Positions 188 through 61,626 of a DNA stretch of 64,000 nt are shown here, piece by piece. Position numbers and translations under genes: made by a program. The number at the start of each line of letters is the position of its first letter. Within the stretch, counting starts at the first letter, position 1. The notes beneath the pieces are model-generated. The model had not been told where the DNA came from. It made no database searches and saw nothing but the letters and a program-made list of their open reading frames with translations. The DNA is taken from IMG/VR virus record IMGVR_UViG_3300044997_001199, positions 151,331 through 215,330 of that record. One strand, given 5' to 3'.

Positions 188-412
188 TCAATACAGGGTT
201 TTAGGCAATTCTTGGCTAGCCAAATATCTACGCCAACGAGATTTGGCCGCGGATTTTTTGCGTTTTCTCACCGAAGTGGGTTTTTCGTAGAACTCATATT
301 TCCTGAGATCCATGAGTATGCCCGAAGTCTGGACCTTTTTTTTGAATTTACGCAGTGCTTTTTCAACGTTTCCGTCGTTGACAAACACTCTGCGACCATT
401 TAATTCACTCAT
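188..412 (-). CDS. rpsU: Ribosomal protein bS21
   Basis: V.V.DGNVEKALRKFKKKV..GIL..LR..EFYEKPT..RKRKK.AA..R, typical S21 pattern, 74 aa. Confidence 0.92.
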   Translation of the reverse strand: MSELNGRRVFVNDGNVEKALRKFKKKVQTSGILMDLRKYEFYEKPTSVRKRKKSAAKSRWRRYLASQELPKTLY

Positions 413-6093: not shown

Positions 6094-7271
6094 TGCAGCA
6101 CCCTCGCAAGCTCGGGCAGAGTGATTTTCCCGATCGACGACAGCTGACCAAATGCAATCTGCAGGGCCTGATTGGCACGGGCCTGGTCAGGCGGAATGAT
6201 CTTGGCTAGTTGATCACAGCCCGATGGTATGAATTCTGCGCCCGATGGTATGAATTCTGCGCCCGATGGTATGAATTCTGCGCCCGATGGTATGAATGCT
6301 GCGTCAGGAAATACCAGAGGAAACACCAGATCTAGATCGGAGTTGATAGTGCCATCAAGATTGTAGATAAGCACCGCACCAACCGGTGACGGAAATGTCA
6401 GGCTGGCAAAACTCTGCGGAAATGTTTTGACTGGGTTCAGTAGATCGGCCAGACTATCGAGATTGGGCGTGGTCACTTCTAATATTTCCAATGCATCCTG
6501 CAGATTGGCACCGGTGATGTCTGTCAGTGCATTGAAAATATCTTTTTCAGTCTGGGCTGGAACAGTCTGGGCACCATCTGTGCCGTCGATCTCCAGATCA
6601 ACTTCAACTCCGTTTTCGTCCAAGGCACGTTCTATGGCCGGAGTCAGTCCGCCGGCTATACGTACGATCTGCGTCAATACACTGGAGGGAAAACCAATGG
6701 TATTTGGTTGTATGGGGTCGATTGCTTGACCTAGATTGCCAAGATCTTGACCAAATGCATCCAGCGCCAGATTGATGCTAGACAGTGCTCCAGTCACAAG
6801 ATCGTCCATGTTGGTAAAAGTAGGTCCAAGATATTCATTGGCATTGACCGCACTTTCGATCACTTTGTTTGTGACATTGATATATCCGTCGGCTGCAGCA
6901 AAGGCCTGCACGAATTTGTTGAGATCACTGACATAGAATTCTCCCAGCCGTCTGAGCTCAATGGTGGCAAACAAAGGTCTAGGGCCAGTCACCGGAGACG
7001 CCGTCAAGACATCTTCAGGTATGCTGTTCGCCAAAACAGGATGCGTGGAACTTCCTATGCTGCGCATGGCATCAATGGTTGAATTGGCCACTCTCAGTGA
7101 AACATTGCCGATGGCCGAGGTCACTGCGTCCATCAGTGGACTTATCAAGGTAGACGACTGATAGGTAGTCAGTTGTGTGGAAAATGCCGCGTTGATAGCC
7201 ACAGCACCTCCCTGATACCATCCAGGTGCGGCATTGAGCTGCAACGGAGACATTGTGGTTTGATAGTTCAT
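6090..7271 (-). CDS. Hypothetical protein, probably virion/baseplate associated
   Basis: 393 aa directly downstream of PAAR; contains FIPSGAE repeats. Confidence 0.55.
   Translation of the reverse strand: MNYQTTMSPLQLNAAPGWYQGGAVAINAAFSTQLTTYQSSTLISPLMDAVTSAIGNVSLRVANSTIDAMRSIGSSTHPVLANSIPEDVLTASPVTGPRPLFATIELRRLGEFYVSDLNKFVQAFAAADGYINVTNKVIESAVNANEYLGPTFTNMDDLVTGALSSINLALDAFGQDLGNLGQAIDPIQPNTIGFPSSVLTQIVRIAGGLTPAIERALDENGVEVDLEIDGTDGAQTVPAQTEKDIFNALTDITGANLQDALEILEVTTPNLDSLADLLNPVKTFPQSFASLTFPSPVGAVLIYNLDGTINSDLDLVFPLVFPDAAFIPSGAEFIPSGAEFIPSGAEFIPSGCDQLAKIIPPDQARANQALQIAFGQLSSIGKITLPELARVLQ
6219..6302. repeat. 21-bp in-frame tandem repeat x4 (GCCCGATGGTATGAATTCTGC)
   Basis: Units start at 6219, 6240, 6261 and 6282 (last has one mismatch); encodes FIPSGAE. 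Confidence 0.95.
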
Positions 7272-7558
7272 GTCAGTCTAACATTGTTGCTGCCGCCAGC
7301 ACGCGGATGACCGCAAGTGTCCGAGTCTGCACCGGTGCGTATAACCGGCCGACCACCGGCCCGCACAGTGGCGCTGCCGCCACGAGTTTTGGCACTGCAA
7401 TGTTTGGCACACCCGGAGCGACCACAGCAGGGGTGCGGAGTGACCGTCTGTGCAGGTATCACTATGGGTCTACCGTTGACCCGCACCGAAGGCACACCCG
7501 ATGTTACCACTCCACCTGCTGTGTTGGGGTCCCCCCGGCGCTGACAACGATATGGCAT
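7268..7558 (-). CDS. PAAR-like spike tip protein (T4 gp5.4-like)
   Basis: R.GD, SVRVNGRP, PHPCC..C..H, GSATVRAGGRP..R.G.D..TCGH...GS.NV. Confidence 0.85.
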   Translation of the reverse strand: MPYRCQRRGDPNTAGGVVTSGVPSVRVNGRPIVIPAQTVTPHPCCGRSGCAKHCSAKTRGGSATVRAGGRPVIRTGADSDTCGHPRAGGSNNVRLT

Positions 7559-13797: not shown

Positions 13798-14514
13798 TCA
13801 CATATTTAGTATGTAGTATTGTTCGACTCTTTTCCACCAGGCCCGAGTCCAGTGTTGAAATTCGGCACCTTCAATTACCCACTGCTGATACTGAGGCGGG
13901 GTGCTGTAAACTCCTGATTGAGTTTCTGTGGGCTTTACACACATCAGGATCACTCCGCGTTGTATGTGTGTGCCATGGATTTCGTTGTGCGCTTCGGCAT
14001 AGGCCGCCAGTTGCAGTTTGTAATCGTCGATCCATTCCTCGCGCTTGGGACGATTGCTTTGTTTAAAATCCATGATGGCCGGTGTGCCTTGGTGCAGACC
14101 CACGCAATCAGTGGTACCTGCGTAAACCCGAGGAAAATACAAAGGAACTTCTATGCCCCAATATTCTGTGACTTGACTGAGTCCGTGTTCTATCACGGTC
14201 TGTGCCATGTCGTGGCTGGGCCACGAAAACGGATTTGGTCCTCGCTCTTTCATGGCACCGTTGCGAACATAGTGCTCGAGATAGGTGTGCATGCGAGTGC
14301 CGCGATTGGCTGCTTCTGTGGTTATGGCCTGTGCCTGTGCATGACCCACGCGATCGCGCCAGGCTTGCAAGGCTTGGCGTTTTTTCTCGGGTTGTGTGCG
14401 ATCAAGAATGGTAGTGACCGAGGGCAATCGATCGCCAGTGGGAGTAGCGTATAGGCGCTGCCCGTTGACTGTTTCTCGAGTTAGTGCCTGATAATCAAAT
14501 TTTGTGGCGATCAA
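13798..14514 (-). CDS. PD-(D/E)XK exonuclease (MGME1/Cas4-like phage exonuclease)
   Basis: LPSVTTIL, RGTRMH..LE, YAGTTDC, IMDFKQS, QLAAY; TTG start coupled to the iscA stop. Confidence 0.85.
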   Translation of the reverse strand: MIATKFDYQALTRETVNGQRLYATPTGDRLPSVTTILDRTQPEKKRQALQAWRDRVGHAQAQAITTEAANRGTRMHTYLEHYVRNGAMKERGPNPFSWPSHDMAQTVIEHGLSQVTEYWGIEVPLYFPRVYAGTTDCVGLHQGTPAIMDFKQSNRPKREEWIDDYKLQLAAYAEAHNEIHGTHIQRGVILMCVKPTETQSGVYSTPPQYQQWVIEGAEFQHWTRAWWKRVEQYYILNM

Positions 14515-14837
14515 ACGGAAAAACTTTCTCCACAGCCACATCTGGCACTTTCATTGGGGTTAATAAACTCAAACCCTTCATTTAATCCCTTTTTAGTCCA
14601 GTCCATGGTCAGGCCCTGGAGGTACACCAGGCTTTTACCATCGGCCCAGACTGAAACTCCATGACTTTCATAATGAAAATGGTCACAGGTGGTGGGTGAG
14701 TGGTCCACATACTCCAGAGTGTATGCCAGGCCAGAGCAGCCAGTGGTTCTTACTCCAACCAAGATACCTAGACCTTTACCTCTTTTATCCAGGGATTCTC
14801 TGACCTTTGCAGCGGCTGTTTCAGTTAAAGAAATCAT
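14511..14837 (-). CDS. iscA: Fe-S cluster assembly A-type carrier IscA
   Basis: MISLTETAA, GCSGLAY, C-terminal NPN....CGCGESF. Confidence 0.95.
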   Translation of the reverse strand: MISLTETAAAKVRESLDKRGKGLGILVGVRTTGCSGLAYTLEYVDHSPTTCDHFHYESHGVSVWADGKSLVYLQGLTMDWTKKGLNEGFEFINPNESARCGCGESFSV

Positions 14838-15211
14838 TAATGTTTTTTTCGATAATCGGTTATAGCAGCTCGGATCGCGTCTTCGGCAAGAATCGAGCAA
14901 TGTATTTTAACTGGAGGGAGTGCAAGATGTTCGGCGATTTCAGTATTCTTGATAGTTGCTGCTTGGTCCAGAGTCTTACCTTTGACCCACTCCGTAACGA
15001 GTGATGAACTTGCGATAGCCGAGCCGCAGCCATAGGTCTTGAATTTCGCATCAGTGATTACTCCATCCTCTACTTTGATCTGCAGTTTCATGACATCGCC
15101 GCAGGCCGGCGCACCTACCATGCCGGTTCCTACTCCTGCTTCGTCCGTGTCAAACGTGCCCACGTTTCGGGGATTCTCATAATGATCAATGACTTTTTCT
15201 GAATATGCCAT
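14837..15211 (-). CDS. iscU: Fe-S scaffold IscU
   Basis: MAYSEKVIDHYENPRNVG, GAPACGD, GCGSAIAS, LPPVKIHCS. Confidence 0.97.
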   Translation of the reverse strand: MAYSEKVIDHYENPRNVGTFDTDEAGVGTGMVGAPACGDVMKLQIKVEDGVITDAKFKTYGCGSAIASSSLVTEWVKGKTLDQAATIKNTEIAEHLALPPVKIHCSILAEDAIRAAITDYRKKH

Positions 15212-35186: not shown

Positions 35187-35781
35187 GCATACCTCTTTTG
35201 TTCAACTAAATTTGTCAGGATCATGGTGTAATGAATGGCCCACTCTCCGGGTTCGGGGCAATGAAACTATTTATTTTGACGGTAGTGTGATAGACAATAT
35301 CAGTATCGAGTTTTCAATGCCGTTGAATGCTCTGAACACGTTGGAAATTGAACATTACGGAAAGTCCTTCGGCGAAAACGGACGTTGGGATACGCTGGTC
35401 GAGGATGGTCAAATCACGCAGGACCGCGCTGTAAAAATCAATCACATCTGCCTGGACGAGGTAGATCTCATCGATTACCTATTTAAAAACTTTCCCATGA
35501 AAGTTGGTCAAGAAACCATTAGTACCGATTACATGGGCCACAACGGCGTCATTTCGATTGCATTTGAGTCTCCGGTGTACAATTGGATTATTAAAACTTT
35601 CGTGGCCCCAAAAGAAAGAAACAAACCCACTTTTGATCTGGTAGTAGAAACCAGCTTTGGCAACCTGTTTGATTATTCGCAGGACCTATTAGAGATAGAA
35701 GAAATTGAAAACATTCTGATCCAAAATGCACATCTCATTGATAAACCTTCCGCGATTCGAAATACACCGGCCGCCTCTTAG
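35185..35781 (+). CDS. Hypothetical protein (beta-rich), radical SAM partner
   Basis: 198 aa overlapping the radical SAM start. Confidence 0.6.
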   Translation: MHTSFVQLNLSGSWCNEWPTLRVRGNETIYFDGSVIDNISIEFSMPLNALNTLEIEHYGKSFGENGRWDTLVEDGQITQDRAVKINHICLDEVDLIDYLFKNFPMKVGQETISTDYMGHNGVISIAFESPVYNWIIKTFVAPKERNKPTFDLVVETSFGNLFDYSQDLLEIEEIENILIQNAHLIDKPSAIRNTPAAS

Positions 35782-37207
35782 TCTCGCAATACTCAGCGAG
35801 ATATGTAATCAAGAACAGGTCAAATACCGATGCCTAGATTTCAGTTTGGTTATATGGCAGGAATTGCCTCAAGATTTTGAAAAGATCGATACTTTTTGTA
35901 TTACCGGAGAAATTGACCCCGAGTGCCTCGACCGTTTGGTTAGGCTAATTGACGCTACTGTCAGCAATATTTTGGCACAAACCCCTGACACCATCTTTTC
36001 ATTGAGTCTTTTAAGCACGTGGAGTTGCCATATCTGTGAATTGTTCTGCAGCAGCGTAAAACGTCAAAGCCAGTGCGAAGTGCTGCTGGGCGGTCAAGGG
36101 TTGGCGTCGGAATCTTGGGTACAAAAACAAGTGTCTGAAAAAAAAGCGGACCATTTTCTCATCGGCGAAGGTGAGATTACTTTTCGTCGATTCCTACAGG
36201 GTGCAAGGTCTGGACCCGGTATCAACAACTTTGATTTCCAACAAGTGGATGACCTTGACCAACACTGTGTGATACCCGACTACCGGGGTCTACCGCTTGA
36301 ACAATACCCCTACTTGACTAGCCGTCCCGATTTGTTTATCACTGCCAGCCGCGGCTGTGTTCGTAATTGCGGCTACTGTGATATCGGGTACCTATGGAAA
36401 AAATATCGATATCGTAGCGCACAACACGTGGCCGAGGAGATGATAACTCAATACCAAAGGCATGGAATACGTGACTTTTTTTTCACCGACAGTCTAATCA
36501 ATGGTAGCATGAAGATGCTCAACGAACTTTGCGACAAGCTGATAGATTACCAAAGTAGAAATCCCATGGCTGATTTCAAATGGCGTGGGCAATATATTTT
36601 TCGCCCACGTGCCACAGTCACAGAGCAACACATAGAGAAGATGGCTGCAGCCGGGGTAACCTATCTAATTGTTGGGTTAGAAACTGGCAGTGACCGAGTG
36701 CGGTTTGACATGAATAAAAAACATACTACCGAGGATGCAGAATGGTTCCTCGAAATGTTTAAAAAATACGGTATACAATGTCGCTTGCTCATGCTTACCG
36801 GTTGGGTTACAGAGACATTGGAGGATCATACCGATACCATGATGTTGTTTCAACGGTGGCAAAAATACGTAGCCAGTGGTACTATCAGCGGTATCGAACT
36901 CGGTTCAACATTGACAATATTAGAACACAGTCCAATTGGCCAGCAGGTTTCCAACTTAGGACTAACTTTTATCAATGATAAATCTTATCTATGGTACAAT
37001 CCAGGAAATCCAGATCTCACAATCGGTGAACGGATGCGGCGGCGTATCGAGTTACACAAGGAGGCCATGCGCTATAATTGGCCTATTACCCGTAGTGCGT
37101 ATCGGTTAGGCACGATCAAGCGGAGTTTGCTCGAAGCAGTTGAGGCGTTGGAGCAAGGTCCGATCCAACACCGTAACAACTCAGTTTTTTCAATCAAATC
37201 AATTTGA
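35726..37207 (+). CDS. B12-binding-domain radical SAM protein
   Basis: PPLSLAIL, LLGG, IGEGE, SRGCVRNCGYC (CxxxCxxC), FTDS, GLETGS, GWVTET. Confidence 0.88.
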   Translation: MHISLINLPRFEIHRPPLSLAILSEICNQEQVKYRCLDFSLVIWQELPQDFEKIDTFCITGEIDPECLDRLVRLIDATVSNILAQTPDTIFSLSLLSTWSCHICELFCSSVKRQSQCEVLLGGQGLASESWVQKQVSEKKADHFLIGEGEITFRRFLQGARSGPGINNFDFQQVDDLDQHCVIPDYRGLPLEQYPYLTSRPDLFITASRGCVRNCGYCDIGYLWKKYRYRSAQHVAEEMITQYQRHGIRDFFFTDSLINGSMKMLNELCDKLIDYQSRNPMADFKWRGQYIFRPRATVTEQHIEKMAAAGVTYLIVGLETGSDRVRFDMNKKHTTEDAEWFLEMFKKYGIQCRLLMLTGWVTETLEDHTDTMMLFQRWQKYVASGTISGIELGSTLTILEHSPIGQQVSNLGLTFINDKSYLWYNPGNPDLTIGERMRRRIELHKEAMRYNWPITRSAYRLGTIKRSLLEAVEALEQGPIQHRNNSVFSIKSI

Positions 37208-49867: not shown

Positions 49868-50134
49868 ATGCAACAAAAAACTTTTCTCATCGTAATAAGA
49901 CGTACCGGGCGAGACGAAGTTTTCCGCCCCAGTGACTGGGCCGAACGTCTTTGCAACATGATCACAGTGTTTGACCATGGCAACAAATTGGTGGCCAGTT
50001 ACCGACGAAGAATGGGCGTATCTCAATCAACAGTCACTGCCTGTGCCAAAATCATTGACTACAAATTGTTATCAATGTACTATTTGACTTTACAACAAGC
50101 ATCAGAGGATACCAATGTCTCGTATTACCAGTGA
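49868..50134 (+). CDS. DUF3579-like protein (C-terminus may be degenerate)
   Basis: FRPSDWAERLC signature. Confidence 0.65.
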   Translation: MQQKTFLIVIRRTGRDEVFRPSDWAERLCNMITVFDHGNKLVASYRRRMGVSQSTVTACAKIIDYKLLSMYYLTLQQASEDTNVSYYQ

Positions 50135-50342
50135 ACTTGCAGTAAATGCAATAGGCAGTCGTTATGATTTGGTGCTGATCGCATCGCGCAGGGCAAGAGA
50201 ACTGCGCCGGGGCTGGACACCCAAGGTAAAAAGCCCGTATGGACCCTTGGTAGTGGCGCTGGCCGAAATTGAAAAAGGTGTAGTCGGGCGGGAGTACCTC
50301 AACAAGCCGGCCAATATCGGTCGTCACGAAACCCCTGAATGA
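50115..50342 (+). CDS. rpoZ: RNA polymerase omega subunit
   Basis: MSRITSE.A...IGSRYDLVLIASRRAREL..G..P, P.V.AL.EI..G. Confidence 0.88.
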   Translation: MSRITSELAVNAIGSRYDLVLIASRRARELRRGWTPKVKSPYGPLVVALAEIEKGVVGREYLNKPANIGRHETPE

Positions 50343-51276: not shown

Positions 51277-51513
51277 ATGATCAGAACCAGTACAATTTGT
51301 TACGATCCTTCCAATTTCGATCATCGTCATGATTTTTATCGTTTACTAAAATCTGGAACATTTACTTGGTGCAAAAACCGCTATGCACTGAAAGGACAGT
51401 ATGGTGATGTACTGAACATGATGTTAGACCTCACTGTGCGATATTATGCAGAGCAAGAATTTGGTCCGCTGGAATCGGTTAACATCGATACACCAAATAA
51501 AGTAATGACATGA
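51277..51513 (+). CDS. Hypothetical protein
   Basis: AAGGA SD, coupled to the next gene. Confidence 0.55.
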   Translation: MIRTSTICYDPSNFDHRHDFYRLLKSGTFTWCKNRYALKGQYGDVLNMMLDLTVRYYAEQEFGPLESVNIDTPNKVMT

Positions 51514-51908
51514 CCAAGATTTTTGTCAATGGCACATTCGATGTGCTGCATCTAGGACATCTGGCTCTGTTGGAATATGCGCACAGTCTAGGCACTGTGA
51601 TGGTTGCCATTGACAGCGATGCCAGGATCAAACAATTGAAAGGTGCCCAAAGACCTGTAAATACTCTGGTAGAACGCATTACCATGCTAGAGGCCCTGCG
51701 TTGTGTAGACAGTGTGCGCGTATTTGATACCGATCAAGATCTGATCGACATAATACGTGCGTATCAACCCAACATCATGGTCAAAGGCTCTGACTATCAA
51801 GGACGTAACATCATTGGCGCCGAACACTGTGACCACATAGACTTTTTTCCGAGACTCGATGATTACTCAACCACTAAAAAAATTCAAAATATTGCTCATA
51901 GGCGATGA
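51510..51908 (+). CDS. Heptose-1-phosphate nucleotidyltransferase-like (HldE domain II / HldC)
   Basis: NGTFDVLHLGH, DSD..IKQLKG..RPVN, VKGSDY, YSTT. Confidence 0.85.
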   Translation: MTKIFVNGTFDVLHLGHLALLEYAHSLGTVMVAIDSDARIKQLKGAQRPVNTLVERITMLEALRCVDSVRVFDTDQDLIDIIRAYQPNIMVKGSDYQGRNIIGAEHCDHIDFFPRLDDYSTTKKIQNIAHRR

Positions 51909-52629
51909 TTGTGTAGACATCTATCGCTATGGTACGGTGAATCGACTGTGCCCCGAGGCTCCTGTGCCAATTTTTGAACCCAGCCACGACGAAACTCGAC
52001 CTGGCATGGCCAACAATGTGGCACAGAACTTTCTAAGCCTGGGGTGCGAGGTCACTACTATGCTGGGCGATGCCAGCACAAAGATACGCCTCATTGATAT
52101 CCGCAGCGGTCAACAGGTCTTGCGTCTAGACCAGAATGTTCAATCGTCTCCGATCAAACTGCACTGTCGTATACCTCAGACTTTTGATGCCGTGGTTATT
52201 TCAGACTACAACAAAGGCGCCGTGGATCATCGTCTCATACGAGAGATACGCAAAGAATTTGTTGGTCCGGTATTCATCGATACCAAGAAGTCCGAGTTGG
52301 CCAAATTCAACGGATGCATTTTAAAAATCAACGAACGCGAGTTCAACGATCGCAAAAGCATATGCGATCAATTGATCGTAACTCTAGGCGATCGTGGTGC
52401 AAGGTATCACGATCACGGCACCATCACTGATTTTGCTCCGCATCGAGTGGAAGTGAGCGATGTGTGCGGAGCCGGTGACACCTTCCTGGCTGCCTTGGTC
52501 TACCAATACCTTGTTACCGGAGAAATCGCCCAGGCCATTGAATTTGCGATGTCTGCTGCGGCAGTCACTGTACAACATCTAGGCGTGTATGCGCCCACAC
52601 TGGAGGAAATTAATGCGATTTCGTGGTGA
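51859..52629 (+). CDS. Heptose-7-phosphate kinase-like PfkB (HldE domain I / HldA)
   Basis: LIGD..VD.Y.YG.V.RLCPEAPVP, ISDYNKG, DVCGAGDTF. Confidence 0.88.
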   Translation: MITQPLKKFKILLIGDDCVDIYRYGTVNRLCPEAPVPIFEPSHDETRPGMANNVAQNFLSLGCEVTTMLGDASTKIRLIDIRSGQQVLRLDQNVQSSPIKLHCRIPQTFDAVVISDYNKGAVDHRLIREIRKEFVGPVFIDTKKSELAKFNGCILKINEREFNDRKSICDQLIVTLGDRGARYHDHGTITDFAPHRVEVSDVCGAGDTFLAALVYQYLVTGEIAQAIEFAMSAAAVTVQHLGVYAPTLEEINAISW

Positions 52630-52990
52630 AGTCATCAAAGGATGGGGGTCGGAGAAGATCTGGGTCACCAACGATCTCTACTGCGGTAAATTCATGACAT
52701 TCCACAGTGGCGCAAAATTCAGCATGCATTTTCATGCACACAAAGACGAGACATGGTATGTGATGTCTGGTAGATTCACTGTGCGCACTATCAATACCCG
52801 GGATGCTTCGCATCACACCCGGGAGCTTGGTACAGGGGATGTGTGGCACAATCCGCCCTTGTTGCCGCACCAGTTGATTTGTCACGAAGCTGGCACCATT
52901 ATCGAAGTCAGCACCGCTGATTCTGTAGAAGACAACTATCGCGTGGAGGCCGGGGACAGCCAGAAATACCACTGTAATGATTACACATGA
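52613..52990 (+). CDS. Cupin sugar isomerase/epimerase
   Basis: KGWG.E, FSMHFH..KDETWYV, PHQL, EVST.D...DNYR. Confidence 0.8.
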   Translation: MRFRGEVIKGWGSEKIWVTNDLYCGKFMTFHSGAKFSMHFHAHKDETWYVMSGRFTVRTINTRDASHHTRELGTGDVWHNPPLLPHQLICHEAGTIIEVSTADSVEDNYRVEAGDSQKYHCNDYT

Positions 52991-53366: not shown

Positions 53367-53422
53367 GCATGTATTTCATAATTTGATGTAGTGATTTTGC
53401 GATGATTTTGCCTTATACTCAC

Positions 53423-53462
53423 TATAAGTACTTCAAGCAACAACTGTTGCTCGGTGCTTGAA
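53423..53462 (+). promoter_or_regulatory. Late-promoter variant TATAAGTA and 5' UTR hairpin of pqqA
   Basis: TATAAGTA at 53423-53430; TTCAAGCA/TGCTTGAA stem 53432-53462. Confidence 0.5.
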
Positions 53463-53487
53463 ATCTTTTATCAAAGGAAACACAACC

Positions 53488-53559
53488 ATGTGGTCCAAAC
53501 CTGCTGCCGCTGATCTGCGCTTTGGTTTTGAAGTCACCATGTACATCGCTGCTCGCTGA
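53488..53559 (+). CDS. pqqA: PQQ precursor peptide PqqA (23 aa)
   Basis: Hand translation MWSKPAAADLRFGFEVTMYIAAR with the E-x-x-x-Y core; AAAGGA SD; absent from the ORF track because of size. Confidence 0.93.
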   Translation: MWSKPAAADLRFGFEVTMYIAAR

Positions 53560-53584
53560 TTTTTGCCGGCAATGTATGTTCAAC

Positions 53585-53613
53585 AAAAAAGGACCCCTGC
53601 GGGGGTCCTTTTT
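53585..53613. terminator. Bidirectional rho-independent terminator
   Basis: AAAAAA-GGACCCC-TGCG-GGGGTCC-TTTTT. Confidence 0.9.
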
Positions 53614-53624
53614 GTGATTAAAGA

Positions 53625-53653
53625 TTGACCACAAACCCAACCTTGCATACAAT
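53625..53653 (+). promoter_or_regulatory. Sigma70-type early promoter for the MoxR-like ATPase
   Basis: TTGACC-N17-TACAAT. Confidence 0.65.
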
Positions 53654-53685: not shown

Positions 53686-54780
53686 ATGAGTTATGTCAGC
53701 GAAAATCGTACTGTTACCAGTGTGCAGGCTCGCAAAAGTTTGTTGACTGCATTCCGAGTCCAACGCCCGGTGTTTCTTTGGGGCCCCCCGGGCATTGGCA
53801 AGAGCGAATTGGTCGCAGGTATTACACAGGAGCTAGGCGGGCTGATGATCGACCTGCGTCTGGGACAGATGGAACCCACAGACATCCGTGGTATTCCATT
53901 CTACAACAAAGAAACTGGTCGCATGGACTGGGCGCCGCCCGTCGATCTGCCCGATGCAGAACTGGCCAGCCAATATCCCATTGTTGTTCTGTTCATGGAC
54001 GAAATGAACTCAGCGCCGGCTTCGGTGCAGGCCTCAGCATATCAGCTGACCTTGAATCGCTGCGTGTGTCGCTATCATCTGCCACGCAATGTGGTCATCG
54101 TGGCAGCAGGCAATCGTGAGTCAGACAAAGGTGTGACCTTCCGCATGCCCACGCCATTGGCCAATCGTTTTGTGCACATCGAAATGCGTGTGGACTTTGA
54201 ATCCTGGCATGCCTGGGCTGTGACCAACAACGTGCACAAGGATGTGGTAGGCTACATTACCTTTGCCAAGCAAGATCTCTATGACTTTGATAGCAAGAGC
54301 TCCAGTCGAGCATTTGCCACTCCGCGGTCTTGGACCTTTGTGAGCCAACTGATCAGCGACGACACTGTGGATGAGGACACTGCGACCAATCTCGTGGCCG
54401 GTACCGTGGGCGAGGGCCTGGCCGTGAAGTTCATGGCTCACCGCAAAATTGCCAGCCGTATGCCGCAGCCCATTGACATTCTCCGGGGCAAGGTCAAGGA
54501 CCTCGAAGTCAAGGAAGTGTCGGCCATGTACAGCCTGGTCACGTCCATGTGTTACGAACTGCGAGACGCTGTACAAAACAAAGTGTCCGACAAGGAATTC
54601 CACGAGATGGCTGACAACTTCTTTGGCTACATGATGAAGAACTTTGAGACCGAACTGGTAGTCATGGGTGCACGTATCGCACTGACCACATTCAACCTGC
54701 CGTTCCAGCCCGCCAAGCTCAAAAATTTCGACGAGTTTCACCAACGCTATGGCAAGTACATTCTGCAGGCCAACAGCTAA
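53686..54780 (+). CDS. MoxR-like AAA+ ATPase
   Basis: WGPPGIGKS, DIRGIP, LFMDEMN, AAGNR, PLANRF, TPRSW. Confidence 0.88.
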   Translation: MSYVSENRTVTSVQARKSLLTAFRVQRPVFLWGPPGIGKSELVAGITQELGGLMIDLRLGQMEPTDIRGIPFYNKETGRMDWAPPVDLPDAELASQYPIVVLFMDEMNSAPASVQASAYQLTLNRCVCRYHLPRNVVIVAAGNRESDKGVTFRMPTPLANRFVHIEMRVDFESWHAWAVTNNVHKDVVGYITFAKQDLYDFDSKSSSRAFATPRSWTFVSQLISDDTVDEDTATNLVAGTVGEGLAVKFMAHRKIASRMPQPIDILRGKVKDLEVKEVSAMYSLVTSMCYELRDAVQNKVSDKEFHEMADNFFGYMMKNFETELVVMGARIALTTFNLPFQPAKLKNFDEFHQRYGKYILQANS

Positions 54781-55048: not shown

Positions 55049-55434
55049 TCATGCGATACAAAATACAACGACTAGACGGGCGCTATAGCTATCGCAGATG
55101 GTTTCAATACTACATCGGCTTCCGCTCCAGCATGAATCAGGATCACGGGCCCATGCAGTTTACTCAAGCACAACAATGGTTTTCAGACACCTATGGTTGG
55201 AGCGCCGAAATACGTCAATGGGCCGACATCCATCGCTGGACTGCCATGAGACTACAGAGCTTGCATCAACCCTGGCAGACCGAAGACCGAGTGCTAGAAA
55301 ACCTTCCTGCTGTGTGCAATCGACACTGGTCCTGGACCAACAGAGCCACTGATCTTCGTATCTATGTAGCATCAGATCGCGAACTGGCGTTTTTCCAACT
55401 GGCACATTCTGTTGACCAAAAAAACCGTACCTAA
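55045..55434 (+). CDS. Hypothetical protein
   Basis: Trp-rich; C-terminal RIYV.SD.ELAFFQL. Confidence 0.55.
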   Translation: MIMRYKIQRLDGRYSYRRWFQYYIGFRSSMNQDHGPMQFTQAQQWFSDTYGWSAEIRQWADIHRWTAMRLQSLHQPWQTEDRVLENLPAVCNRHWSWTNRATDLRIYVASDRELAFFQLAHSVDQKNRT

Positions 55435-55462
55435 CACAATAGCATTGTCAACGGAGGCTCAC

Positions 55463-56731
55463 ATGACCACTGCCACAAATACCACCAACAAAGACGATGC
55501 CAAGCGATTCGCCACCCTCATCGGGCCCACCGATTCCAGGGTCGATGCTCAGGCCCGTGAGAGCTTGGTCACTGCCCGGGTAGGCATGTTGCTGCGAGCC
55601 AGTTTCTTTGGCAATCTTGCCACACGCCTGCGCCTGATCAATGCTGATGAATGGTGCGCCACTGCTGCCACCGACGGTCGCAATTTTTACTACAACAGTC
55701 GTTTCATCATGATGCTGCGCCCGCGAGAGATTGAATTCTTAGTTGGGCATGAAGTGTTGCACTGCATCTATGATCACTTTGGGCGGCGCAACGATCGCGA
55801 CCCGCAACTGTGGGGTATTGCCTGTGACTATTGTGTCAATGCTGATCTCAAAAAGCACCGTGTGGGTGAATTCATTACTTCGGTACCCTGTCTGTACGAC
55901 AGCAAGTACGAAGACATGAGTTCCGAAGAAATCTATGATCAACTCTACAAAAATGCCAACAAGATCAACATCAACGATCTTATTGACTGCATGATCGACA
56001 AACACATGGACGGCAATGACAGTGATGACGAGCAGAATGGCAAGGCGCCCAGCACCTTGACTGCCGAAGAACGTGCCAAGATCCGTGACGAAATCAAAGA
56101 AGCCATGTTGGCTGCTGCTGCCACAACCGACGGCGCCGCCGGTAACCTGCCCGCTGGTGTGCGTCGCATAATCCAGCAAATAACCGAGCCGCGTCTGAAC
56201 TGGCGAGAAATGATCCGTATGAACATCGAAAGCACGGTCAAGAGTGACTTTACCTGGCTGCGATCCAACCGTCGTGGTTGGCACATGGACGCCGTGATGC
56301 CCGGCATGAAGAATGACGAAATGGTCGACGTGGTGATCATGATCGATGCGTCTGGTTCCATGAACAATGATACCTTGCGTGACTGCCTGGGAGAAGTCCA
56401 AAACATCATGGAGTCATTTCCGTCGTTCCGCATCCACATCGCTGCTTTTGATACCCAGGTATACAATCCGGTGGACTATACATCAGACAACCTTGACAAC
56501 ATCTGCGATTACGAAATCTCGGGCGGCGGCGGCACTGACTTTGATGTCATGTACGATTATCTGCGAAAAAATGATATCCAGCCCAAACGCATGATTGTGT
56601 TCACAGACGGCTATCCCTTTGGTTCGTGGGGCGACGAAAACTATTGCGATGTGACCTGGGTGCTGCATGGAACCACCAGCATTGTTCCGCCTTGGGGCTC
56701 CTATGCCTACTTCGAGGACGAGAAAAAGTAA
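55463..56731 (+). CDS. Metallopeptidase (HExxH) + VWA domain protein (DUF2201-like)
   Basis: TAATDG, HEVLH, DASGS MIDAS, GGGGTDF, FTDGY; TTGACC-N17-CACAAT upstream. Confidence 0.88.
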   Translation: MTTATNTTNKDDAKRFATLIGPTDSRVDAQARESLVTARVGMLLRASFFGNLATRLRLINADEWCATAATDGRNFYYNSRFIMMLRPREIEFLVGHEVLHCIYDHFGRRNDRDPQLWGIACDYCVNADLKKHRVGEFITSVPCLYDSKYEDMSSEEIYDQLYKNANKININDLIDCMIDKHMDGNDSDDEQNGKAPSTLTAEERAKIRDEIKEAMLAAAATTDGAAGNLPAGVRRIIQQITEPRLNWREMIRMNIESTVKSDFTWLRSNRRGWHMDAVMPGMKNDEMVDVVIMIDASGSMNNDTLRDCLGEVQNIMESFPSFRIHIAAFDTQVYNPVDYTSDNLDNICDYEISGGGGTDFDVMYDYLRKNDIQPKRMIVFTDGYPFGSWGDENYCDVTWVLHGTTSIVPPWGSYAYFEDEKK

Positions 56732-58653: not shown

Positions 58654-58809
58654 GTGTCTGTAGAACAACTCAAAGCTGCGCTGGCAAAAAAACAACAAAA
58701 ACAGAACCCCCGCGGTTCCAGGTCTGACTCTCTTGATTCTGCTTCTGCTCCGCGCAGTCAAGTGTCAGTGAAGAAACCCTCCAAGAAATCCGCCGGCCGC
58801 GGACGATGA
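58654..58809 (+). CDS. 51-aa basic protein
   Basis: GTG start; MSVEQLKAALAKKQQK...KKPSKKSAGRGR; stop overlaps the next ATG. Confidence 0.55.
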   Translation: MSVEQLKAALAKKQQKQNPRGSRSDSLDSASAPRSQVSVKKPSKKSAGRGR

Positions 58810-59771
58810 ATGTTCTAGTCACCGGCGGCCTGGGATTCATCGGGCACCAGGTAGTAAAGCGCCTCATGCGTCGAGGTGATGACACCGTGATCATGGACAC
58901 GCAAACTGATTATGGTATCATACCCCACAGCGAACTGCAATATCTCATGGGCGAAAGATTGAAAAAAATCAACAACCATCCAGTGATTCACGCAGACATC
59001 TCTGCTGGGGGCCCAGTTGACTACGCCATTGCTCGTGATCAGCCTGAAGTCATAATACATTGCGCCAGCGTTCCAAGGCAAAAAGTAGTCAACGCCAACC
59101 CTGTCTGGGGTGCAGATGTCATGATACGGGGTTTGATCAATCTTCTTGAGAGTGCCAAAAAACATCAAGTACGCAGATTTGTGTACGTGAGTTCTAGCAT
59201 GGTTTATGGTGACTTTAAAGATCAGGTTACCGAGGAGTCTCCTTGTAACCCACAAGGCCAATATGGCATCATGAAACTTGCTGGCGAATGGTTGGTCAAA
59301 GACTATGCTTGTCGTTACGGCTTTGAATATGTTATCATTCGTCCCAGTGCGGTGTACGGTCCTTTGGATGTAGAAGATCGAGTTGTAGCCAAATTCATGA
59401 TTGCAGCCATGCATAATGGAACACTCAAGGTCAATGGTGCCGAAGAAACTTTAGATTTTACCTATGTTGATGATGCAGCCGATGGTATTGTGGCGTCTGC
59501 AACGTTACCACAGGCTGCTAATAATACTTTCAATATCACAAAAAGCCATGGTGTTACTTTACGTCGAGCAGCCATGATGATTGTAAGTATTGTAGGTTCT
59601 GGCAATGTTGAATGTCGAGATCGAGATCTCGACTTCCCTAGTAGAGGTGCATTAAATATAGACAAAGCTCGTGACCTCCTGGGTTATAATCCTAAAATTG
59701 ATGTTGAAGAAGGATTTCAGAATTATTACAAGTGGTTGAGAGAGTCAACATATTGGAATGTGCATGATTAA
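58806..59771 (+). CDS. NAD-dependent nucleotide-sugar epimerase/dehydratase
   Basis: VTGGLGFIG, SSSMVYG, YGIMK, DFTYVDD. Confidence 0.92.
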   Translation: MNVLVTGGLGFIGHQVVKRLMRRGDDTVIMDTQTDYGIIPHSELQYLMGERLKKINNHPVIHADISAGGPVDYAIARDQPEVIIHCASVPRQKVVNANPVWGADVMIRGLINLLESAKKHQVRRFVYVSSSMVYGDFKDQVTEESPCNPQGQYGIMKLAGEWLVKDYACRYGFEYVIIRPSAVYGPLDVEDRVVAKFMIAAMHNGTLKVNGAEETLDFTYVDDAADGIVASATLPQAANNTFNITKSHGVTLRRAAMMIVSIVGSGNVECRDRDLDFPSRGALNIDKARDLLGYNPKIDVEEGFQNYYKWLRESTYWNVHD

Positions 59772-59874: not shown

Positions 59875-60535
59875 CCCCGGTGCACGTAGTGGATTCATTG
59901 CCGCATGGTTAACCAATCAGTTGACTGATTCAACAGTTGATGTTAGTAAGAAGTTGAATCCAATCTTTTGTAAAATACACAAACTGGATGATGTTAATAT
60001 TGTTAAAAACTTTTTAGGTACAAAAATAAGAATTCGTCCCGAGATAGAATCCATTGATCTACATTCGCTTTTATTTTTAAGAAAAAATGTTTACTCACAA
60101 ATTCCAAATTTTACTCGCGACGAGTATTCGCTAGAAACTTTTACAAAAATAGCATGCTTTGCTCGAGAGATATCTGAATGGGACCAGGTTCTGGACAACA
60201 ATTTATATGATTTTGTATTAAACTTTAGTGATACGTTTAATAACGACCTTATGATTGAATTATATAAAAAAGTTATAGGCATTGACCCATCTAGTTCTAT
60301 GATTGTTAATTTGATTGAAACTAACAAAATAAACAACATATCTATAAACCACAATCATGCTTGTTCAATTTTAAAATTATGTCTTTCTCAAGAAAACAAA
60401 TTAAATCTTAAAGAACAAAATAGATTCTGGAGCATAGTAGATGTATATGCTAGAACATCAGTTGATAAACTTTATGAAACAGTTTATGATTCTATCAAGC
60501 TAGAAAATTACGATCCATTGGCATGCAAGGTTTAA
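59864..60535 (+). CDS. Hypothetical AT-rich protein, sulfotransferase-like N-terminus, 5' end possibly clipped
   Basis: HADPGARSGFIAAWL; GTG start without a clear SD. Confidence 0.5.
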   Translation: MHADPGARSGFIAAWLTNQLTDSTVDVSKKLNPIFCKIHKLDDVNIVKNFLGTKIRIRPEIESIDLHSLLFLRKNVYSQIPNFTRDEYSLETFTKIACFAREISEWDQVLDNNLYDFVLNFSDTFNNDLMIELYKKVIGIDPSSSMIVNLIETNKINNISINHNHACSILKLCLSQENKLNLKEQNRFWSIVDVYARTSVDKLYETVYDSIKLENYDPLACKV

Positions 60536-61626
60536 CGATCCCATTTACCGGTCTTCGACGACAATATAATAGCCTTCGTCAGGAGATATTAGATGCCACC
60601 GACGAAGTTCTTCGTAGTGGCATACTCATGAATGGCAATAACACTGCCGAGTTTGAGCATTGGCTGAAAAAGAAAAACAATGTAAGTTATGCTGTGACCT
60701 GTCACAGTGGAACCGTGGCTTTAGAAATTATTGCAAGATATCATTACCAACAACAATTACCAAAACCACCAACTGTATTAATTCCCAGTATGACTTATGT
60801 GGCCACCGCCAATGCATTTGCCAATGCAGGTTGGGATATTCAATTTATTGATGTTGATTCTTATGGCATCCTTGATTACAAACAAATTCCCGAATTTCTC
60901 ATTTACCAAGCCGTGGTAATTATCGGGATGTATGGTGCCAGTGTTACACATTTTGGTAATACAAAATTTTGGACCCAGCGAGAAAAACAAGGAACCATTG
61001 TTATTGAAGATGCCGCACAACATTGGTTGGCTGCTGATTGTCAGAGAATTGGAAATGCAGCAGCCATTAGTTTTGATCCAATGAAGAATTTAGCCTGTTA
61101 CGGGAATGGCGGCGCGGTTTTAACCAACGATCGAAATCTCTACGAATTTGCTGTTAGTTGGAGAGATAACGGAAAGTTGTCACAGCACTTGTATAACGGA
61201 TCAAATGTCAGAATGAGTGAGTTAGATTGTGCACACATGTTGGTCAAAACAAATCATGTCAGCAAATGGCAATCTCGAAGAGAAAATATTGCAAATTTTT
61301 GGATGGAATCTCTTAAAGATTTCCCTGTTCGTTGTCTAACTGACAGGAGTAATGCTCATGATCATGCTTACCACAAGTTTGTTATTGACATTGATCAACG
61401 CGATCAAATCAAAAAAGAACTTGCTAATCGTAAAATTGAAACTCGGGTACATTATGAACGACCTTTACACGAACTTGATGGTGTGTTTAGACAATACCCC
61501 GGTCCGGGGTTGTTAGCTACATCTAGCTCGCTGAGTCGCAGAGTACTGAGTTTGCCGATCTATCCCGAACTCACTGATCTTGAAGTGGAATATATCATTG
61601 ATCGGGTACGAGATTGCGCTTCATGA
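60523..61626 (+). CDS. DegT/DnrJ/EryC1/StrS PLP sugar aminotransferase
   Basis: SGTVAL, TYVATANA, IEDAAQ, SFDPMKNL..GNGG, LSLPIYP. Confidence 0.92.
   Translation: MQGLTIPFTGLRRQYNSLRQEILDATDEVLRSGILMNGNNTAEFEHWLKKKNNVSYAVTCHSGTVALEIIARYHYQQQLPKPPTVLIPSMTYVATANAFANAGWDIQFIDVDSYGILDYKQIPEFLIYQAVVIIGMYGASVTHFGNTKFWTQREKQGTIVIEDAAQHWLAADCQRIGNAAAISFDPMKNLACYGNGGAVLTNDRNLYEFAVSWRDNGKLSQHLYNGSNVRMSELDCAHMLVKTNHVSKWQSRRENIANFWMESLKDFPVRCLTDRSNAHDHAYHKFVIDIDQRDQIKKELANRKIETRVHYERPLHELDGVFRQYPGPGLLATSSSLSRRVLSLPIYPELTDLEVEYIIDRVRDCAS

What the first reader, a model, noticed from the sequence alone, without database searches (positions are those of the whole stretch)
53423..53613. Stand-alone phage pqqA transcription unit: supplying the consumed precursor of a host redox cofactor
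Seen: late-type TATAAGTA, a 5' hairpin, SD, the 23-aa MWSKPAAADLRFGFEVTMYIAAR and a strong terminator; no pqqB-E in the window; missed by the ORF track. Established: PQQ is cut from the Glu and Tyr of the PqqA ExxxY motif, one peptide per cofactor, using the Fe-S radical SAM enzyme PqqE. PQQ serves periplasmic alcohol, methanol and sugar dehydrogenases. Inference: the phage encodes only the stoichiometric substrate to sustain host PQQ and respiration after host transcription shuts down, possibly aided by phage IscU/IscA. This predicts a PQQ-producing host. Phage pqqA may have been noted before; I cannot verify novelty.
Basis: partly seen in the sequence, partly recalled or inferred. Interest (0 to 1): 0.85.

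Follow-up and report, generated by a model that had tools for sequence, protein, structure and literature searches.

The report
Jumbo phage carries lone pqqA gene
A large uncultured phage carries, as its only PQQ gene, a 23-residue copy of the peptide that bacteria use up to make the redox cofactor PQQ; the gene is real and well conserved, but phage pqqA was already reported from lake viromes in 2020, so this is a new example rather than a new kind of thing.

Summary
Window 53488-53559 (+) encodes the 23-aa peptide MWSKPAAADLRFGFEVTMYIAAR. It scores 37.8 bits on TIGR02107 (cut-off 20) and 38.2 bits on PF08042 (cut-off 21.1). It has a Shine-Dalgarno site, a 5' hairpin and a strong intrinsic terminator, and gene callers missed it.

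The window is the last 64 kb of a 163-kb contig of a jumbo phage; an IMG/VR contig of the same phage is 215 kb. Its nearest cultured relatives are Pseudomonas phage PA5oct and its group (about 50% aa identity). No pqqB-E lies in the window or in the 102 kb of contig I read.

The peptide is 22/23 identical to the PqqA of Rhodocyclaceae MAGs. The same peptide sits directly upstream of pqqBCDE in high-GC metagenome contigs. Differences from those cellular genes are almost all synonymous.

Lone pqqA is common in phages:
- at least 150 IMG/VR contigs, none with pqqB-E in the DNA fetched around it;
- seven cultured methylotroph phage types, mostly unannotated there.

Where I could look them up, phage peptides were identical to PqqA of the host family.

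Best reading: an auxiliary gene supplying the consumable precursor to the host's PqqB-E. This is inferred, not shown. The "late promoter" label and the IscU/IscA link are unsupported. Coutinho et al. (2020) already reported viral pqqA.

The parts
53412..53442 (+). 31-nt conserved upstream block CTTATACTCACTATAAGTACTTCAAGCAACA. It holds two -10-like hexamers (TATACT 53414-19; TATAAG within TATAAGTA 53423-30) and the 5' arm of the leader hairpin. Candidate promoter and/or 5' RNA element.
   Evidence: Identical over 31 nt in the relative L278, while the flanking intergenic DNA is 64% and 40% identical and the CDS 86%. It occurs once in the phage DNA I hold and only in this phage and L278 in IMG/VR. 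No sigma-70 promoter passed the scan.
53425..53460 (+). 5' leader hairpin
   Evidence: -16.3 kcal/mol, z = -3.56. L278 keeps a hairpin (-19.1 kcal/mol, z = -3.73) with a different 3' arm: AGUACUUA there, GGUGCUUG here.
53474..53478 (+). Shine-Dalgarno AAGGA, 9 nt before the ATG
   Evidence: Read from the sequence. 123 of 123 viral pqqA ORFs have such a motif 4-18 nt upstream.
53488..53559 (+). pqqA coding sequence, 23 codons plus TGA. The Glu15 and Tyr19 of the E-x3-Y motif are the residues that would become PQQ.
   Evidence: TIGR02107 37.8 bits against cut-off 20. PF08042 38.2 bits against 21.1. 22/23 identical to the peptide named Rhodocyclaceae PqqA. 59-64 of 72 nt identical to cellular genes, with one non-synonymous change.
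53585..53615 (+). Intrinsic terminator: A-run, GGACCCC, loop TGCG, GGGGTCC, T5. Symmetric, so possibly bidirectional.
   Evidence: -22.2 kcal/mol. L278 has an unrelated sequence at the same place that is also a canonical terminator (CCGCGCC, 6-nt loop, GGCGCGG, U9).
53625..53653 (+). Sigma-70-like promoter TTGACC-17-TACAAT of the next gene (AAA ATPase 53686-54780). It marks the downstream boundary of the pqqA unit.
   Evidence: 10 of 12 matches. Same type as PA5oct promoters (PMC7318152).
53070..53366 (+). Upstream 98-aa gene of unknown function, syntenic with pqqA in the relative L278. There is no terminator between it and pqqA, so read-through into pqqA is possible. It is not PqqD-like.
   Evidence: 65% aa identity in L278, same order and strand. 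Only 6 homologues in 5.8 billion proteins. hhalign against a PqqD profile gives probability 0.1%.

Best explanation
The ORF is an authentic, host-derived pqqA carried as a small self-contained insert ('moron') in a jumbo myovirus. The phage is probably of a betaproteobacterium, with Rhodocyclaceae as the best guess.

Proposed mechanism (steps 2-4 are inferred):
1. The gene is transcribed from the conserved upstream element or by read-through, translated from its own Shine-Dalgarno site, and the transcript ends at the intrinsic terminator. These signals are shown in the sequence; their use is not shown.
2. The 23-aa peptide is bound by the host's PqqD and cross-linked between Glu15 and Tyr19 by the host radical-SAM enzyme PqqE.
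3. It is then processed by host peptidases, PqqB and PqqC into one molecule of PQQ.
4. Because one peptide is destroyed per cofactor while PqqB-E turn over, the precursor and its mRNA are what runs out when the phage shuts down host transcription. Carrying the 72-nt precursor gene alone would keep or raise PQQ supply for periplasmic PQQ dehydrogenases (methanol, alcohol, glucose) and so the energy supply during a long infection.
For: Identity:
- Scores above the curated cut-offs on TIGR02107 and PF08042 across nearly the full length of both models.
- W2, P5, R11, G13, E15 and Y19 are all present.

Host match:
- 22/23 identical to MWTKPAAADLRFGFEVTMYIAAR, which NCBI names PqqA of Rhodocyclaceae MAGs.
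- That peptide lies directly upstream of pqqB-C-D-E in 7 of 15 metagenome contigs with 62-69% GC.

Selection on the peptide:
- Against those cellular genes, 8-13 of 72 nt differ with only one amino-acid change.
- GC3 has fallen from 0.67-0.75 in the cellular genes to 0.50 here, towards the phage's overall GC of 0.48. This points to long residence, not contamination.
- Against the relative L278: 8 synonymous and 2 non-synonymous differences.
- Across 102 distinct viral pqqA coding sequences, pN/pS = 0.26 outside the codons fixed by my search pattern.

Precursor only:
- No PqqB-E in the window, in contig positions 60,892-163,069, or in the DNA fetched (about 1.5-15 kb per locus) around pqqA in 150 IMG/VR loci.
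- Control: 99 of 120 cellular loci have them alongside.
- No PqqC in 50,697 phage records except mislabelled bacterial contigs. No PqqE-like hit in any pqqA-carrying phage.

Recurrence and convergence:
- Lone pqqA in the Methylophilales phages Melnitz (4 isolates), Venkman, MEP301, MEP401, MEP402 and P19250A, and in MW202481.
- Also in a T4-like fragment, L252.
- Also in related 35%-GC jumbo phages, which carry a Methylococcales-type peptide at a different site.
- The two commonest viral peptides, and Venkman's, are identical to peptides named PqqA of Ca. Methylopumilus or Methylophilaceae.

Expression signals:
- Shine-Dalgarno motif in 123 of 123 viral copies.
- Terminator-like hairpin within 90 nt in 60 of 123, against 5.7% of control positions.
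- Hairpin and terminator architecture conserved in L278.

Plausibility from the literature:
- A methylotroph has five pqqA copies, three of them solitary, and the most active are transcribed far above the other pqqA copies.
- Cell extract converts added PqqA into PQQ.
- Both from PMC9851590.
- Overexpressing pqqA alone raised PQQ in G. oxydans (cited in PMC7936290).
- Coutinho et al. proposed the same role for a Baikal virus (PMC7678222).
Against: - No expression, PQQ or fitness data exist for any phage pqqA.
- The host is unknown. The Rhodocyclaceae assignment rests on a 23-aa peptide, and the phage is 48% GC against 62-69% for those bacteria. The relative PA5oct is, from my memory (not checked here), also far lower in GC than its host.
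- From my knowledge, PQQ is a tightly bound, long-lived cofactor. Why new synthesis matters within one infection is therefore unclear.
- In engineering work, whole-cluster overexpression raises PQQ far more than partial sets (PMC7936290). The precursor is therefore not always limiting.
- More than half of this phage's genome (at least 113 kb of 215 kb) was not examined for pqqB-E.
- No convincing promoter was identified.
Confidence: 0.62

Rival explanations
1. Neutral passenger: a tiny piece of host DNA picked up by illegitimate recombination, with no role in infection.
For: The gene is only 72 nt and host-like. It is absent at the syntenic site of the cultured relatives PA5oct and Phosso. It is therefore dispensable for this phage type.
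Against: - Synonymous changes greatly outnumber non-synonymous ones.
- pN/pS = 0.26 across viral copies.
- Codon composition has drifted to the phage's own.
- The leader block, hairpin and terminator are conserved in a diverged relative.
- It has been acquired repeatedly by unrelated phage types and at different sites in related jumbo phages.
Confidence: 0.1
2. Decoy or inhibitor: the peptide occupies the host's PqqD/PqqE and blocks PQQ synthesis, for example to spare SAM or to change periplasmic redox.
For: Nothing here shows that the peptide is converted to PQQ.
Against: - Glu15, Tyr19 and every other conserved position are intact.
- Phage copies are identical or 22/23 identical to functional-type host peptides. 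A decoy should diverge at the reactive residues.
- An identical peptide cannot be distinguished from substrate by the enzymes.
Confidence: 0.04
3. PQQ is raised for a purpose other than energy. One possibility is that secreted PQQ locks the TonB-dependent importer PqqU in its closed state. That would keep competing phages that use PqqU as a receptor off infected or neighbouring cells.
For: PQQ blocks infection of E. coli by the PqqU-dependent phage IsaakIselin, and PQQ-bound PqqU is closed (PMC12124388).
Against: - Nothing links this phage or its host to PqqU.
- The enrichment of lone pqqA in phages of methylotrophs and methanotroph-like hosts fits an energy role better.
- The Pseudomonas/Acinetobacter-type motif gave only 2 hits in IMG/VR, both methylophage variants.
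Confidence: 0.04
4. The locus acts as RNA (a small regulatory RNA or a mimic of the host pqqA leader) and the ORF is incidental.
For: The transcript would be short and structured, with a hairpin at each end. The 31-nt upstream block is better conserved than the CDS.
Against: - The substitution pattern in the CDS is codon-wise, with third positions changing and amino acids kept.
- No Rfam family matches at its curated threshold.
- A Shine-Dalgarno motif is present in all 123 viral copies.
Confidence: 0.03

Closest known systems
Bacterial PqqA (TIGR02107 / PF08042), the precursor peptide of the pqqABCDE(F) pathway
   Same: Length; full-length HMM match; the E-x3-Y core; the W-x-x-P leader. 22/23 identical to the peptide named Rhodocyclaceae PqqA. 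A hairpin or terminator after the gene is also usual in cells: 100 of 116 cellular copies.
   Different: It sits in a phage genome with no pqqB-E nearby, against 99 of 120 cellular loci that have them. GC3 has shifted to the phage's composition. The upstream leader is unrelated to the cellular flanks: homology to cellular copies is confined to the CDS.
Viral pqqA reported as an auxiliary metabolic gene in Lake Baikal viral population VP_266, predicted to infect Methylophilaceae (Coutinho et al. 2020, PMC7678222); also listed among virus-encoded P-cycling genes in PMC13188868
   Same: A phage-borne PqqA precursor gene, read as boosting the host's PQQ-dependent metabolism.
   Different: This one is in a jumbo phage of the PA5oct-related group. 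It carries a Rhodocyclaceae-type rather than a Methylophilaceae-type peptide. No methanol dehydrogenase gene was found in the window. Neither paper describes the precursor-only pattern, the match to host peptides or the regulatory anatomy.
Unannotated pqqA in cultured methylotroph phages: Melnitz, Venkman, MEP301/401/402, P19250A
   Same: A lone 23-24-aa pqqA with a Shine-Dalgarno site and no pqqB-E anywhere in those complete genomes.
   Different: Different phage families (T4-like and small tailed phages), different peptide type and different flanks. In Venkman and MW202481 the gene lies antisense to its neighbours. In Melnitz and MW202481 the annotators called an ORF on the opposite strand instead.
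Solitary extra pqqA copies in methylotroph chromosomes (five copies, three solitary, in the strain of PMC9851590)
   Same: A precursor gene uncoupled from the enzyme genes, consistent with precursor dosage being adjustable on its own.
   Different: Those copies are chromosomal and under host regulation. This one is on a virus.

Membership tests
PqqA precursor peptide (TIGR02107 equivalog / PF08042) | Scores above the curated HMM cut-offs over nearly the whole model | tested here: met
   TIGR02107: 37.8 bits against 20, profile 1-21 of 21. PF08042: 38.2 bits against 21.1, profile 1-19 of 19.
PqqA precursor peptide (TIGR02107 equivalog / PF08042) | Small ribosomal peptide (about 20-40 aa) with the conserved Glu-x3-Tyr that becomes PQQ | tested here: met
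   23 aa with Glu15-Val-Thr-Met-Tyr19. W2, P5, R11 and G13 are also present, and are invariant in the 102 distinct viral coding sequences.
PqqA precursor peptide (TIGR02107 equivalog / PF08042) | Acts in a cell that has PqqB, C, D and E. Operon linkage is usual but not obligatory, since solitary copies are known (PMC9851590). | not testable with these tools
   The host is unknown. The phage itself has none in the window or in 102 kb of contig. The closest cellular peptide lies directly upstream of pqqBCDE and is named as Rhodocyclaceae PqqA.
PqqA precursor peptide (TIGR02107 equivalog / PF08042) | Bound by PqqD, cross-linked by PqqE and converted to PQQ | not testable with these tools
   Needs biochemistry or genetic complementation.
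Phage auxiliary metabolic gene / moron | Host-type metabolic gene inside a bona fide phage genome, flanked by phage genes | tested here: met
   - Phage genes in the window include ribonucleotide reductase, DNA ligase, DnaB helicase and a tail-fibre-like protein.
- Best cultured relatives are PA5oct-group jumbo phages.
- The same phage is a 215-kb IMG/VR contig.
- pqqA is absent at the syntenic site in PA5oct and Phosso.
Phage auxiliary metabolic gene / moron | Expressed during infection and benefits the phage | not testable with these tools
   Only indirect support: Shine-Dalgarno site, terminator, conserved leader and purifying selection.
   - One mismatch to TATAAATA.
- Three copies in the window, the other two inside coding sequence. 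The single exact TATAAATA is at position 162.
- The longer motif TCACTATAAGTA occurs once in the phage DNA I hold.
- The relative PA5oct uses sigma-70-like promoters.
Intrinsic (factor-independent) terminator | G+C-rich stem-loop immediately followed by a T/U run | tested here: met
   7-bp stem, 6 of them G-C, with a 4-nt loop and T5; -22.2 kcal/mol. A non-homologous terminator stands at the same place in L278.

The most novel reading that the evidence does not exclude
Phages of at least five host lineages have repeatedly captured only the consumable precursor of a peptide-derived cofactor, each copy matched to its host's own peptide. The lineages are Methylophilaceae, a Rhodocyclaceae-like group, a Methylococcales-like group and two further freshwater betaproteobacterial types. 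That would make pqqA an auxiliary gene that encodes a substrate rather than an enzyme. In the more exotic version, the extra PQQ is not for energy. It is secreted to close the PqqU outer-membrane importer and shut out competing phages.
Probability: 0.06. Interest if true: 0.8.

Novelty: new member of a known kind. Interest (0 to 1): 0.45.

Why it matters
Nearly all known phage auxiliary metabolic genes encode enzymes. If phage pqqA works as proposed, it shows that the weak point of PQQ supply in an infected cell is the short-lived precursor, not the enzymes. It would also link phage infection directly to methanol, methane-derived carbon and alcohol oxidation in lakes and oceans, because the carriers are mainly phages of methylotrophs.

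Practical points:
- The gene is missed or mis-called in most phage annotations, so its frequency is underestimated.
- Cultured phage-host pairs that carry it already exist, so the idea can be tested at the bench.
- The peptide type may serve as a cheap hint to a phage's host lineage.

Tried and rejected
- Off-by-one coordinates: searches used 53489 as the start and gave no HMM hit. Corrected to 53488.
- T7-like promoter: the upstream CTCACTATA is identical to the T7 promoter core as I remember it. The 13-mer with up to 3 mismatches gave 7 hits against 10 expected, the 12-mer occurs once in the phage DNA held, and no single-subunit RNA polymerase Pfam hit appears among the genes called on the contig stretches I read. 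Rejected as a general phage promoter.
- Sigma-70 promoter upstream of pqqA: the best I could find by eye is GTGATT-17-TATACT (8 of 12), below the scan's threshold. Left open.
- The 98-aa upstream protein as a PqqD-like chaperone: no Pfam or NCBIfam hit. hhalign against a PqqD profile gives probability 0.1%. Rejected.
- The radical SAM protein 35726-37207 as PqqE: it is a B12-binding class B type, with its radical SAM domain at residues 207-372, and has no tblastn match to PqqE. Rejected.
- 'Acinetobacter phage MD-2021a' as a phage with pqqABCDE: the record is a bacterial chromosome contig (ppk, pqqB-E, dipeptidase). Discarded.
- Megablast of the region against 50,697 phage records: no match.
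- PDB search with the peptide: no match.
- Rfam: only sub-threshold hits on the terminator.
- The search for related loci and the search for homologous proteins refuse a 23-33-aa query. I used back-translated DNA patterns and the exact-sequence look-up instead.
- Four contig look-ups failed. In some searches I trimmed the stop codon from the wrong end of a minus-strand gene. In one search the likely cause was a non-ATG start codon.
- Pseudomonas/Acinetobacter-type motif RIGFEVTMY in IMG/VR: only 2 hits, both methylophage variants.
- PQQ-dependent dehydrogenase in the window: none among the large ORFs scanned.
Full report
WHAT IS THERE

The interval 53423-53613 contains a 72-nt ORF on the plus strand, from ATG at 53488 to TGA at 53559. 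It encodes MWSKPAAADLRFGFEVTMYIAAR. My first family scans returned nothing because I had the start one base off. With the right peptide:
- the NCBIfam equivalog model TIGR02107 (PqqA) gives 37.8 bits against a cut-off of 20, covering all 21 model positions;
- Pfam PF08042 gives 38.2 bits against 21.1.

A PqqA HMM I built from about 100 collected peptides, run over all six reading frames of the window, finds this ORF at 55.6 bits and nothing else above 7 bits.

The other features are also present:
- The Shine-Dalgarno AAGGA lies 9 nt upstream of the ATG.
- The leader folds into a hairpin (53425-53460; -16.3 kcal/mol, z = -3.56).
- The ORF is followed by GGACCCC-TGCG-GGGGTCC-TTTTT (-22.2 kcal/mol).
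- A sigma-70-like promoter, TTGACC-17-TACAAT, for the next gene starts right after the terminator.
- Three independent assemblies of the same phage have no gene called in this gap. So 'missed by the ORF track' is correct.

WHOSE GENOME IT IS

The window carries the following:
- ribonucleotide reductase, ATP-dependent DNA ligase, DnaB helicase, a second helicase, a tail-fibre-like protein, ClpX and six tRNAs;
- IscU (TIGR01999, 222 bits), an IscA-type protein and a B12-binding radical SAM enzyme.

It is the last 64 kb of a 163,069-bp JGI contig. The same phage is a 215,330-bp contig in IMG/VR, so it is a jumbo phage.

The best cultured matches are the PA5oct group of Pseudomonas jumbo myoviruses, at about 50% amino-acid identity for the helicase and for the AAA ATPase next to pqqA. 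Sinorhizobium phage Phosso and Agrobacterium phage Atu_ph07 follow. PA5oct and Phosso have no pqqA upstream of the homologous ATPase. The gene is therefore an insertion into a conserved backbone.

IS IT ALONE?

Acinetobacter and betaproteobacterial PqqB, C, D and E find nothing in the window or in contig positions 60,892-163,069 (tblastn E < 1 gave only three short chance alignments; walk). The remaining 113 kb or more of the genome could not be read.

Evidence that this is general:
- PqqC finds no phage among 50,697 records apart from two mislabelled bacterial contigs.
- PqqE finds no pqqA-carrying phage.

WHERE THE PEPTIDE COMES FROM

Of those, 99 have PqqB-E within the 8-kb locus.

The closest cellular peptide, MWTKPAAADLRFGFEVTMYIAAR (22/23), occurs in betaproteobacterial MAGs with 63-66% GC. 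In NCBI it is named PqqA of Rhodocyclaceae bacterium. A metagenome scan found it in 15 contigs, 7 of them with pqqBCDE immediately downstream, at 62-69% GC.

At the DNA level the window's gene is 59-64 of 72 nt identical to these. There is a single non-synonymous change (Thr3 to Ser). GC3 is 0.50 against 0.67-0.75 in the cellular genes. This is the signature of an old capture kept under selection for the peptide. It is not assembly contamination.

The likely host is therefore a PQQ-making betaproteobacterium, perhaps a Rhodocyclaceae member. This rests on 23 residues and is a moderate inference.

HOW COMMON IT IS

Cultured and deposited phages. tblastn of the peptide against phage records found lone, mostly unannotated pqqA in these:
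- Methylophilales phages Melnitz (four isolates), Venkman, MEP301, MEP401 and MEP402;
- Methylophilaceae phage P19250A;
- an uncultured podovirus, MW202481.

In Melnitz and MW202481 an ORF on the opposite strand was annotated instead.

Uncultured viral contigs:
- A pattern for FGFEVTMY in IMG/VR stopped at its 120-locus limit. All 123 motif ORFs are clean 23-25-aa PqqA peptides (49 distinct), and none of the loci has PqqB-E.
- A second pattern added 30 contigs (28 of them new), again none with PqqB-E.
- Seven of ten flanking proteins I sampled match phage families, including portal, tail fibre, helicase, ribonucleotide reductase and gp32-type SSB.

Conservation and signals in the viral copies:
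- All 123 have a Shine-Dalgarno motif.
- 60 of 123 have a terminator-like hairpin within 90 nt, against 5.7% of random positions.
- Outside the codons fixed by the search pattern, pN/pS is 0.26 at pS 0.51.

Match to hosts:
- The two commonest viral peptides are identical to the PqqA of Ca. Methylopumilus and other Methylophilaceae. Venkman's is identical to a Methylophilaceae PqqA.
- A T4-like fragment (L252, with a gp32-type SSB) carries exactly the Rhodocyclaceae-type peptide.
- A group of 35%-GC jumbo phages is related to the window's phage: ribonucleotide reductase 72-79% identical, and one contig is 372 kb. They carry a Methylococcales-type peptide at a different place, between glutaredoxin and ribosomal protein S21. 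Capture has therefore happened more than once, even within this phage group.
- The Pseudomonas/Acinetobacter-type motif is essentially absent from IMG/VR.

REGULATORY ANATOMY

A diverged relative, L278 (from a 94.5-kb contig), keeps the order 98-aa gene then pqqA. The 98-aa protein is 65% identical.

| Segment, window vs L278 | Identity |
|---|---|
| Intergenic 53367-53410 | 64% |
| Block 53412-53442 | 100% (31 nt) |
| Rest of leader 53442-53487 | 40% |
| pqqA coding sequence | 86% |
| Downstream 53560-53625 | 47% |

The conserved block is CTTATACTCACTATAAGTACTTCAAGCAACA.

L278 keeps a hairpin (-19.1 kcal/mol, z = -3.73) with a different 3' arm. It also has a completely different but canonical terminator after the gene. 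So the layout of conserved element, hairpin, Shine-Dalgarno site, pqqA and terminator is selected.

What the element is remains open:
- No sigma-70 promoter passes the scan.
- TATAAGTA is not a recurring upstream motif.
- The resemblance to the T7 promoter core is not repeated anywhere.
- PA5oct uses host polymerase and TTGAC/TATAATA promoters (PMC7318152).
- Read-through from the upstream gene cluster is also possible, because no terminator precedes pqqA.

MECHANISM

Shown:
- a bona fide, selected, translatable pqqA in a phage that lacks the enzymes, at least locally;
- host-type identity of the peptide.

Established knowledge (PMC12124388 introduction; references 50-51 of PMC7678222): PqqA is the substrate, PqqD presents it, PqqE cross-links Glu to Tyr, and PqqB, PqqC and peptidases finish the cofactor.

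Inferred: the phage copy feeds the host enzymes so that PQQ-dependent periplasmic dehydrogenases stay supplied while host transcription is off.

Supporting plausibility:
- Methylotrophs keep several solitary pqqA copies, and the most active are transcribed well above the others.
- Cell extract turns added PqqA into PQQ. Both points are from PMC9851590.
- pqqA overexpression alone raised PQQ in Gluconobacter (cited in PMC7936290).

Against:
- There are no data from any infected cell.
- From my knowledge, PQQ is a stable cofactor.
- The whole cluster raises PQQ far more than partial sets do.

I put 0.62 on this mechanism and about 0.97 on the gene identity.

RIVALS

- Neutral passenger (0.10) is contradicted by the substitution pattern and by convergence.
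- Decoy (0.04) is contradicted by intact reactive residues and identity to host peptides.
- Non-energetic use of PQQ, such as closing the PqqU receptor (0.04), has a literature precedent for PQQ blocking a phage (PMC12124388) but no link to this phage.
- RNA-only function (0.03) is contradicted by codon-wise conservation.

IscU and IscA are real but distant, and the phage has its own radical SAM enzyme to serve. A second IscA-like gene and an Fe superoxide dismutase lie elsewhere on the contig. The link to PqqE is speculation.

The AAA ATPase and the VWA/DUF2201 protein that follow pqqA are a pair conserved in hundreds of phages that have no pqqA, so the adjacency looks coincidental. This is so even though, from my knowledge, MoxR-type ATPases and VWA proteins mature methanol dehydrogenase in methylotrophs.

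NOVELTY AND SCORE

Viral pqqA was reported as an auxiliary gene in Lake Baikal viruses in 2020 (PMC7678222) and listed again in 2026 (PMC13188868). I found no paper in the library that does any of the following:
- notes it in cultured methylophages or in jumbo phages;
- describes the precursor-only rule;
- describes the match to host peptide types.

The finding itself is a new member of a known kind. The wider pattern is worth a short study and can be tested with existing cultured pairs. Interest: 0.45.

Noticed in passing
window 188-412 (-), 405-1613 (-); L265 11521-14251: The phage encodes ribosomal protein S21 and ClpX in the window. Just outside it are DnaK (HSP70), HSP20 and ClpS, and further on ClpP, Fe superoxide dismutase, NAD synthase and a second IscA-like protein (Pfam listings). 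This is an unusually rich set of proteostasis and stress genes for a phage.
   Followed up: partly
window 14511-15211 (-), 35726-37207 (+): IscU (TIGR01999, 222 bits, above cut-off) and an IscA-type protein lie side by side. A 493-aa B12-binding (class B) radical SAM enzyme of unknown substrate lies 20 kb away. The Fe-S genes may serve that enzyme rather than the host's PqqE.
   Followed up: partly
window 53686-54780 (+), 55412-56731 (+): Directly after pqqA come a MoxR-like AAA ATPase and a DUF2201 metallopeptidase/VWA protein. The pair is conserved in PA5oct, Phosso, Atu_ph07, cyanophages and hundreds of other phages without pqqA. MoxR/VWA proteins mature PQQ methanol dehydrogenase in methylotrophs (my knowledge), but here the adjacency looks coincidental.
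   Followed up: partly
L001 3961-4056 (Melnitz-1), L003 2067-2195 (MW202481), L002 (CAKLQF020000010.1): Errors in public annotation. In Melnitz and MW202481 a hypothetical ORF on the opposite strand is called over pqqA. The records named 'Acinetobacter phage MD-2021a' that carry pqqABCDE are bacterial chromosome contigs.
   Followed up: yes
L039, L063, L068, L082; window 51510-51908: A cytidylyltransferase-like gene (PF01467) lies within about 150 nt of pqqA in four unrelated viral contigs, and 1.6 kb upstream in the window. Unexplained recurrence.
   Followed up: no
window 51510-52990, 58806-59771, 60523-61626: A set of sugar-nucleotide and LPS-type genes: a split RfaE-like kinase and adenylyltransferase, a cupin, an NAD-dependent epimerase/dehydratase and a DegT-type aminotransferase. 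UDP-glucose dehydrogenase and phosphomannomutase lie elsewhere on the contig. This suggests the phage modifies surface glycans or its own DNA or virion.
   Followed up: no
L284 5897-13301; L288 (372-kb contig): Jumbo phages of 35% GC, related to the window's phage, carry a Methylococcales-type pqqA between glutaredoxin and S21. In L284 a gap of about 2.2 kb separates the large and small ribonucleotide reductase subunit genes. Likely phages of methanotrophs.
   Followed up: partly
window 50115-50342 (+), 7268-7558 (-): A 75-aa protein with an RNA polymerase omega/Rpb6 Pfam hit (listing) and a PAAR-motif protein. Both are uncommon in phages.
   Followed up: no
PMC9004378, methods section: The OM43 hosts of Melnitz and Venkman are routinely grown with 1 nM PQQ added. 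That would mask any phenotype of the phage pqqA in standard assays.
   Followed up: no
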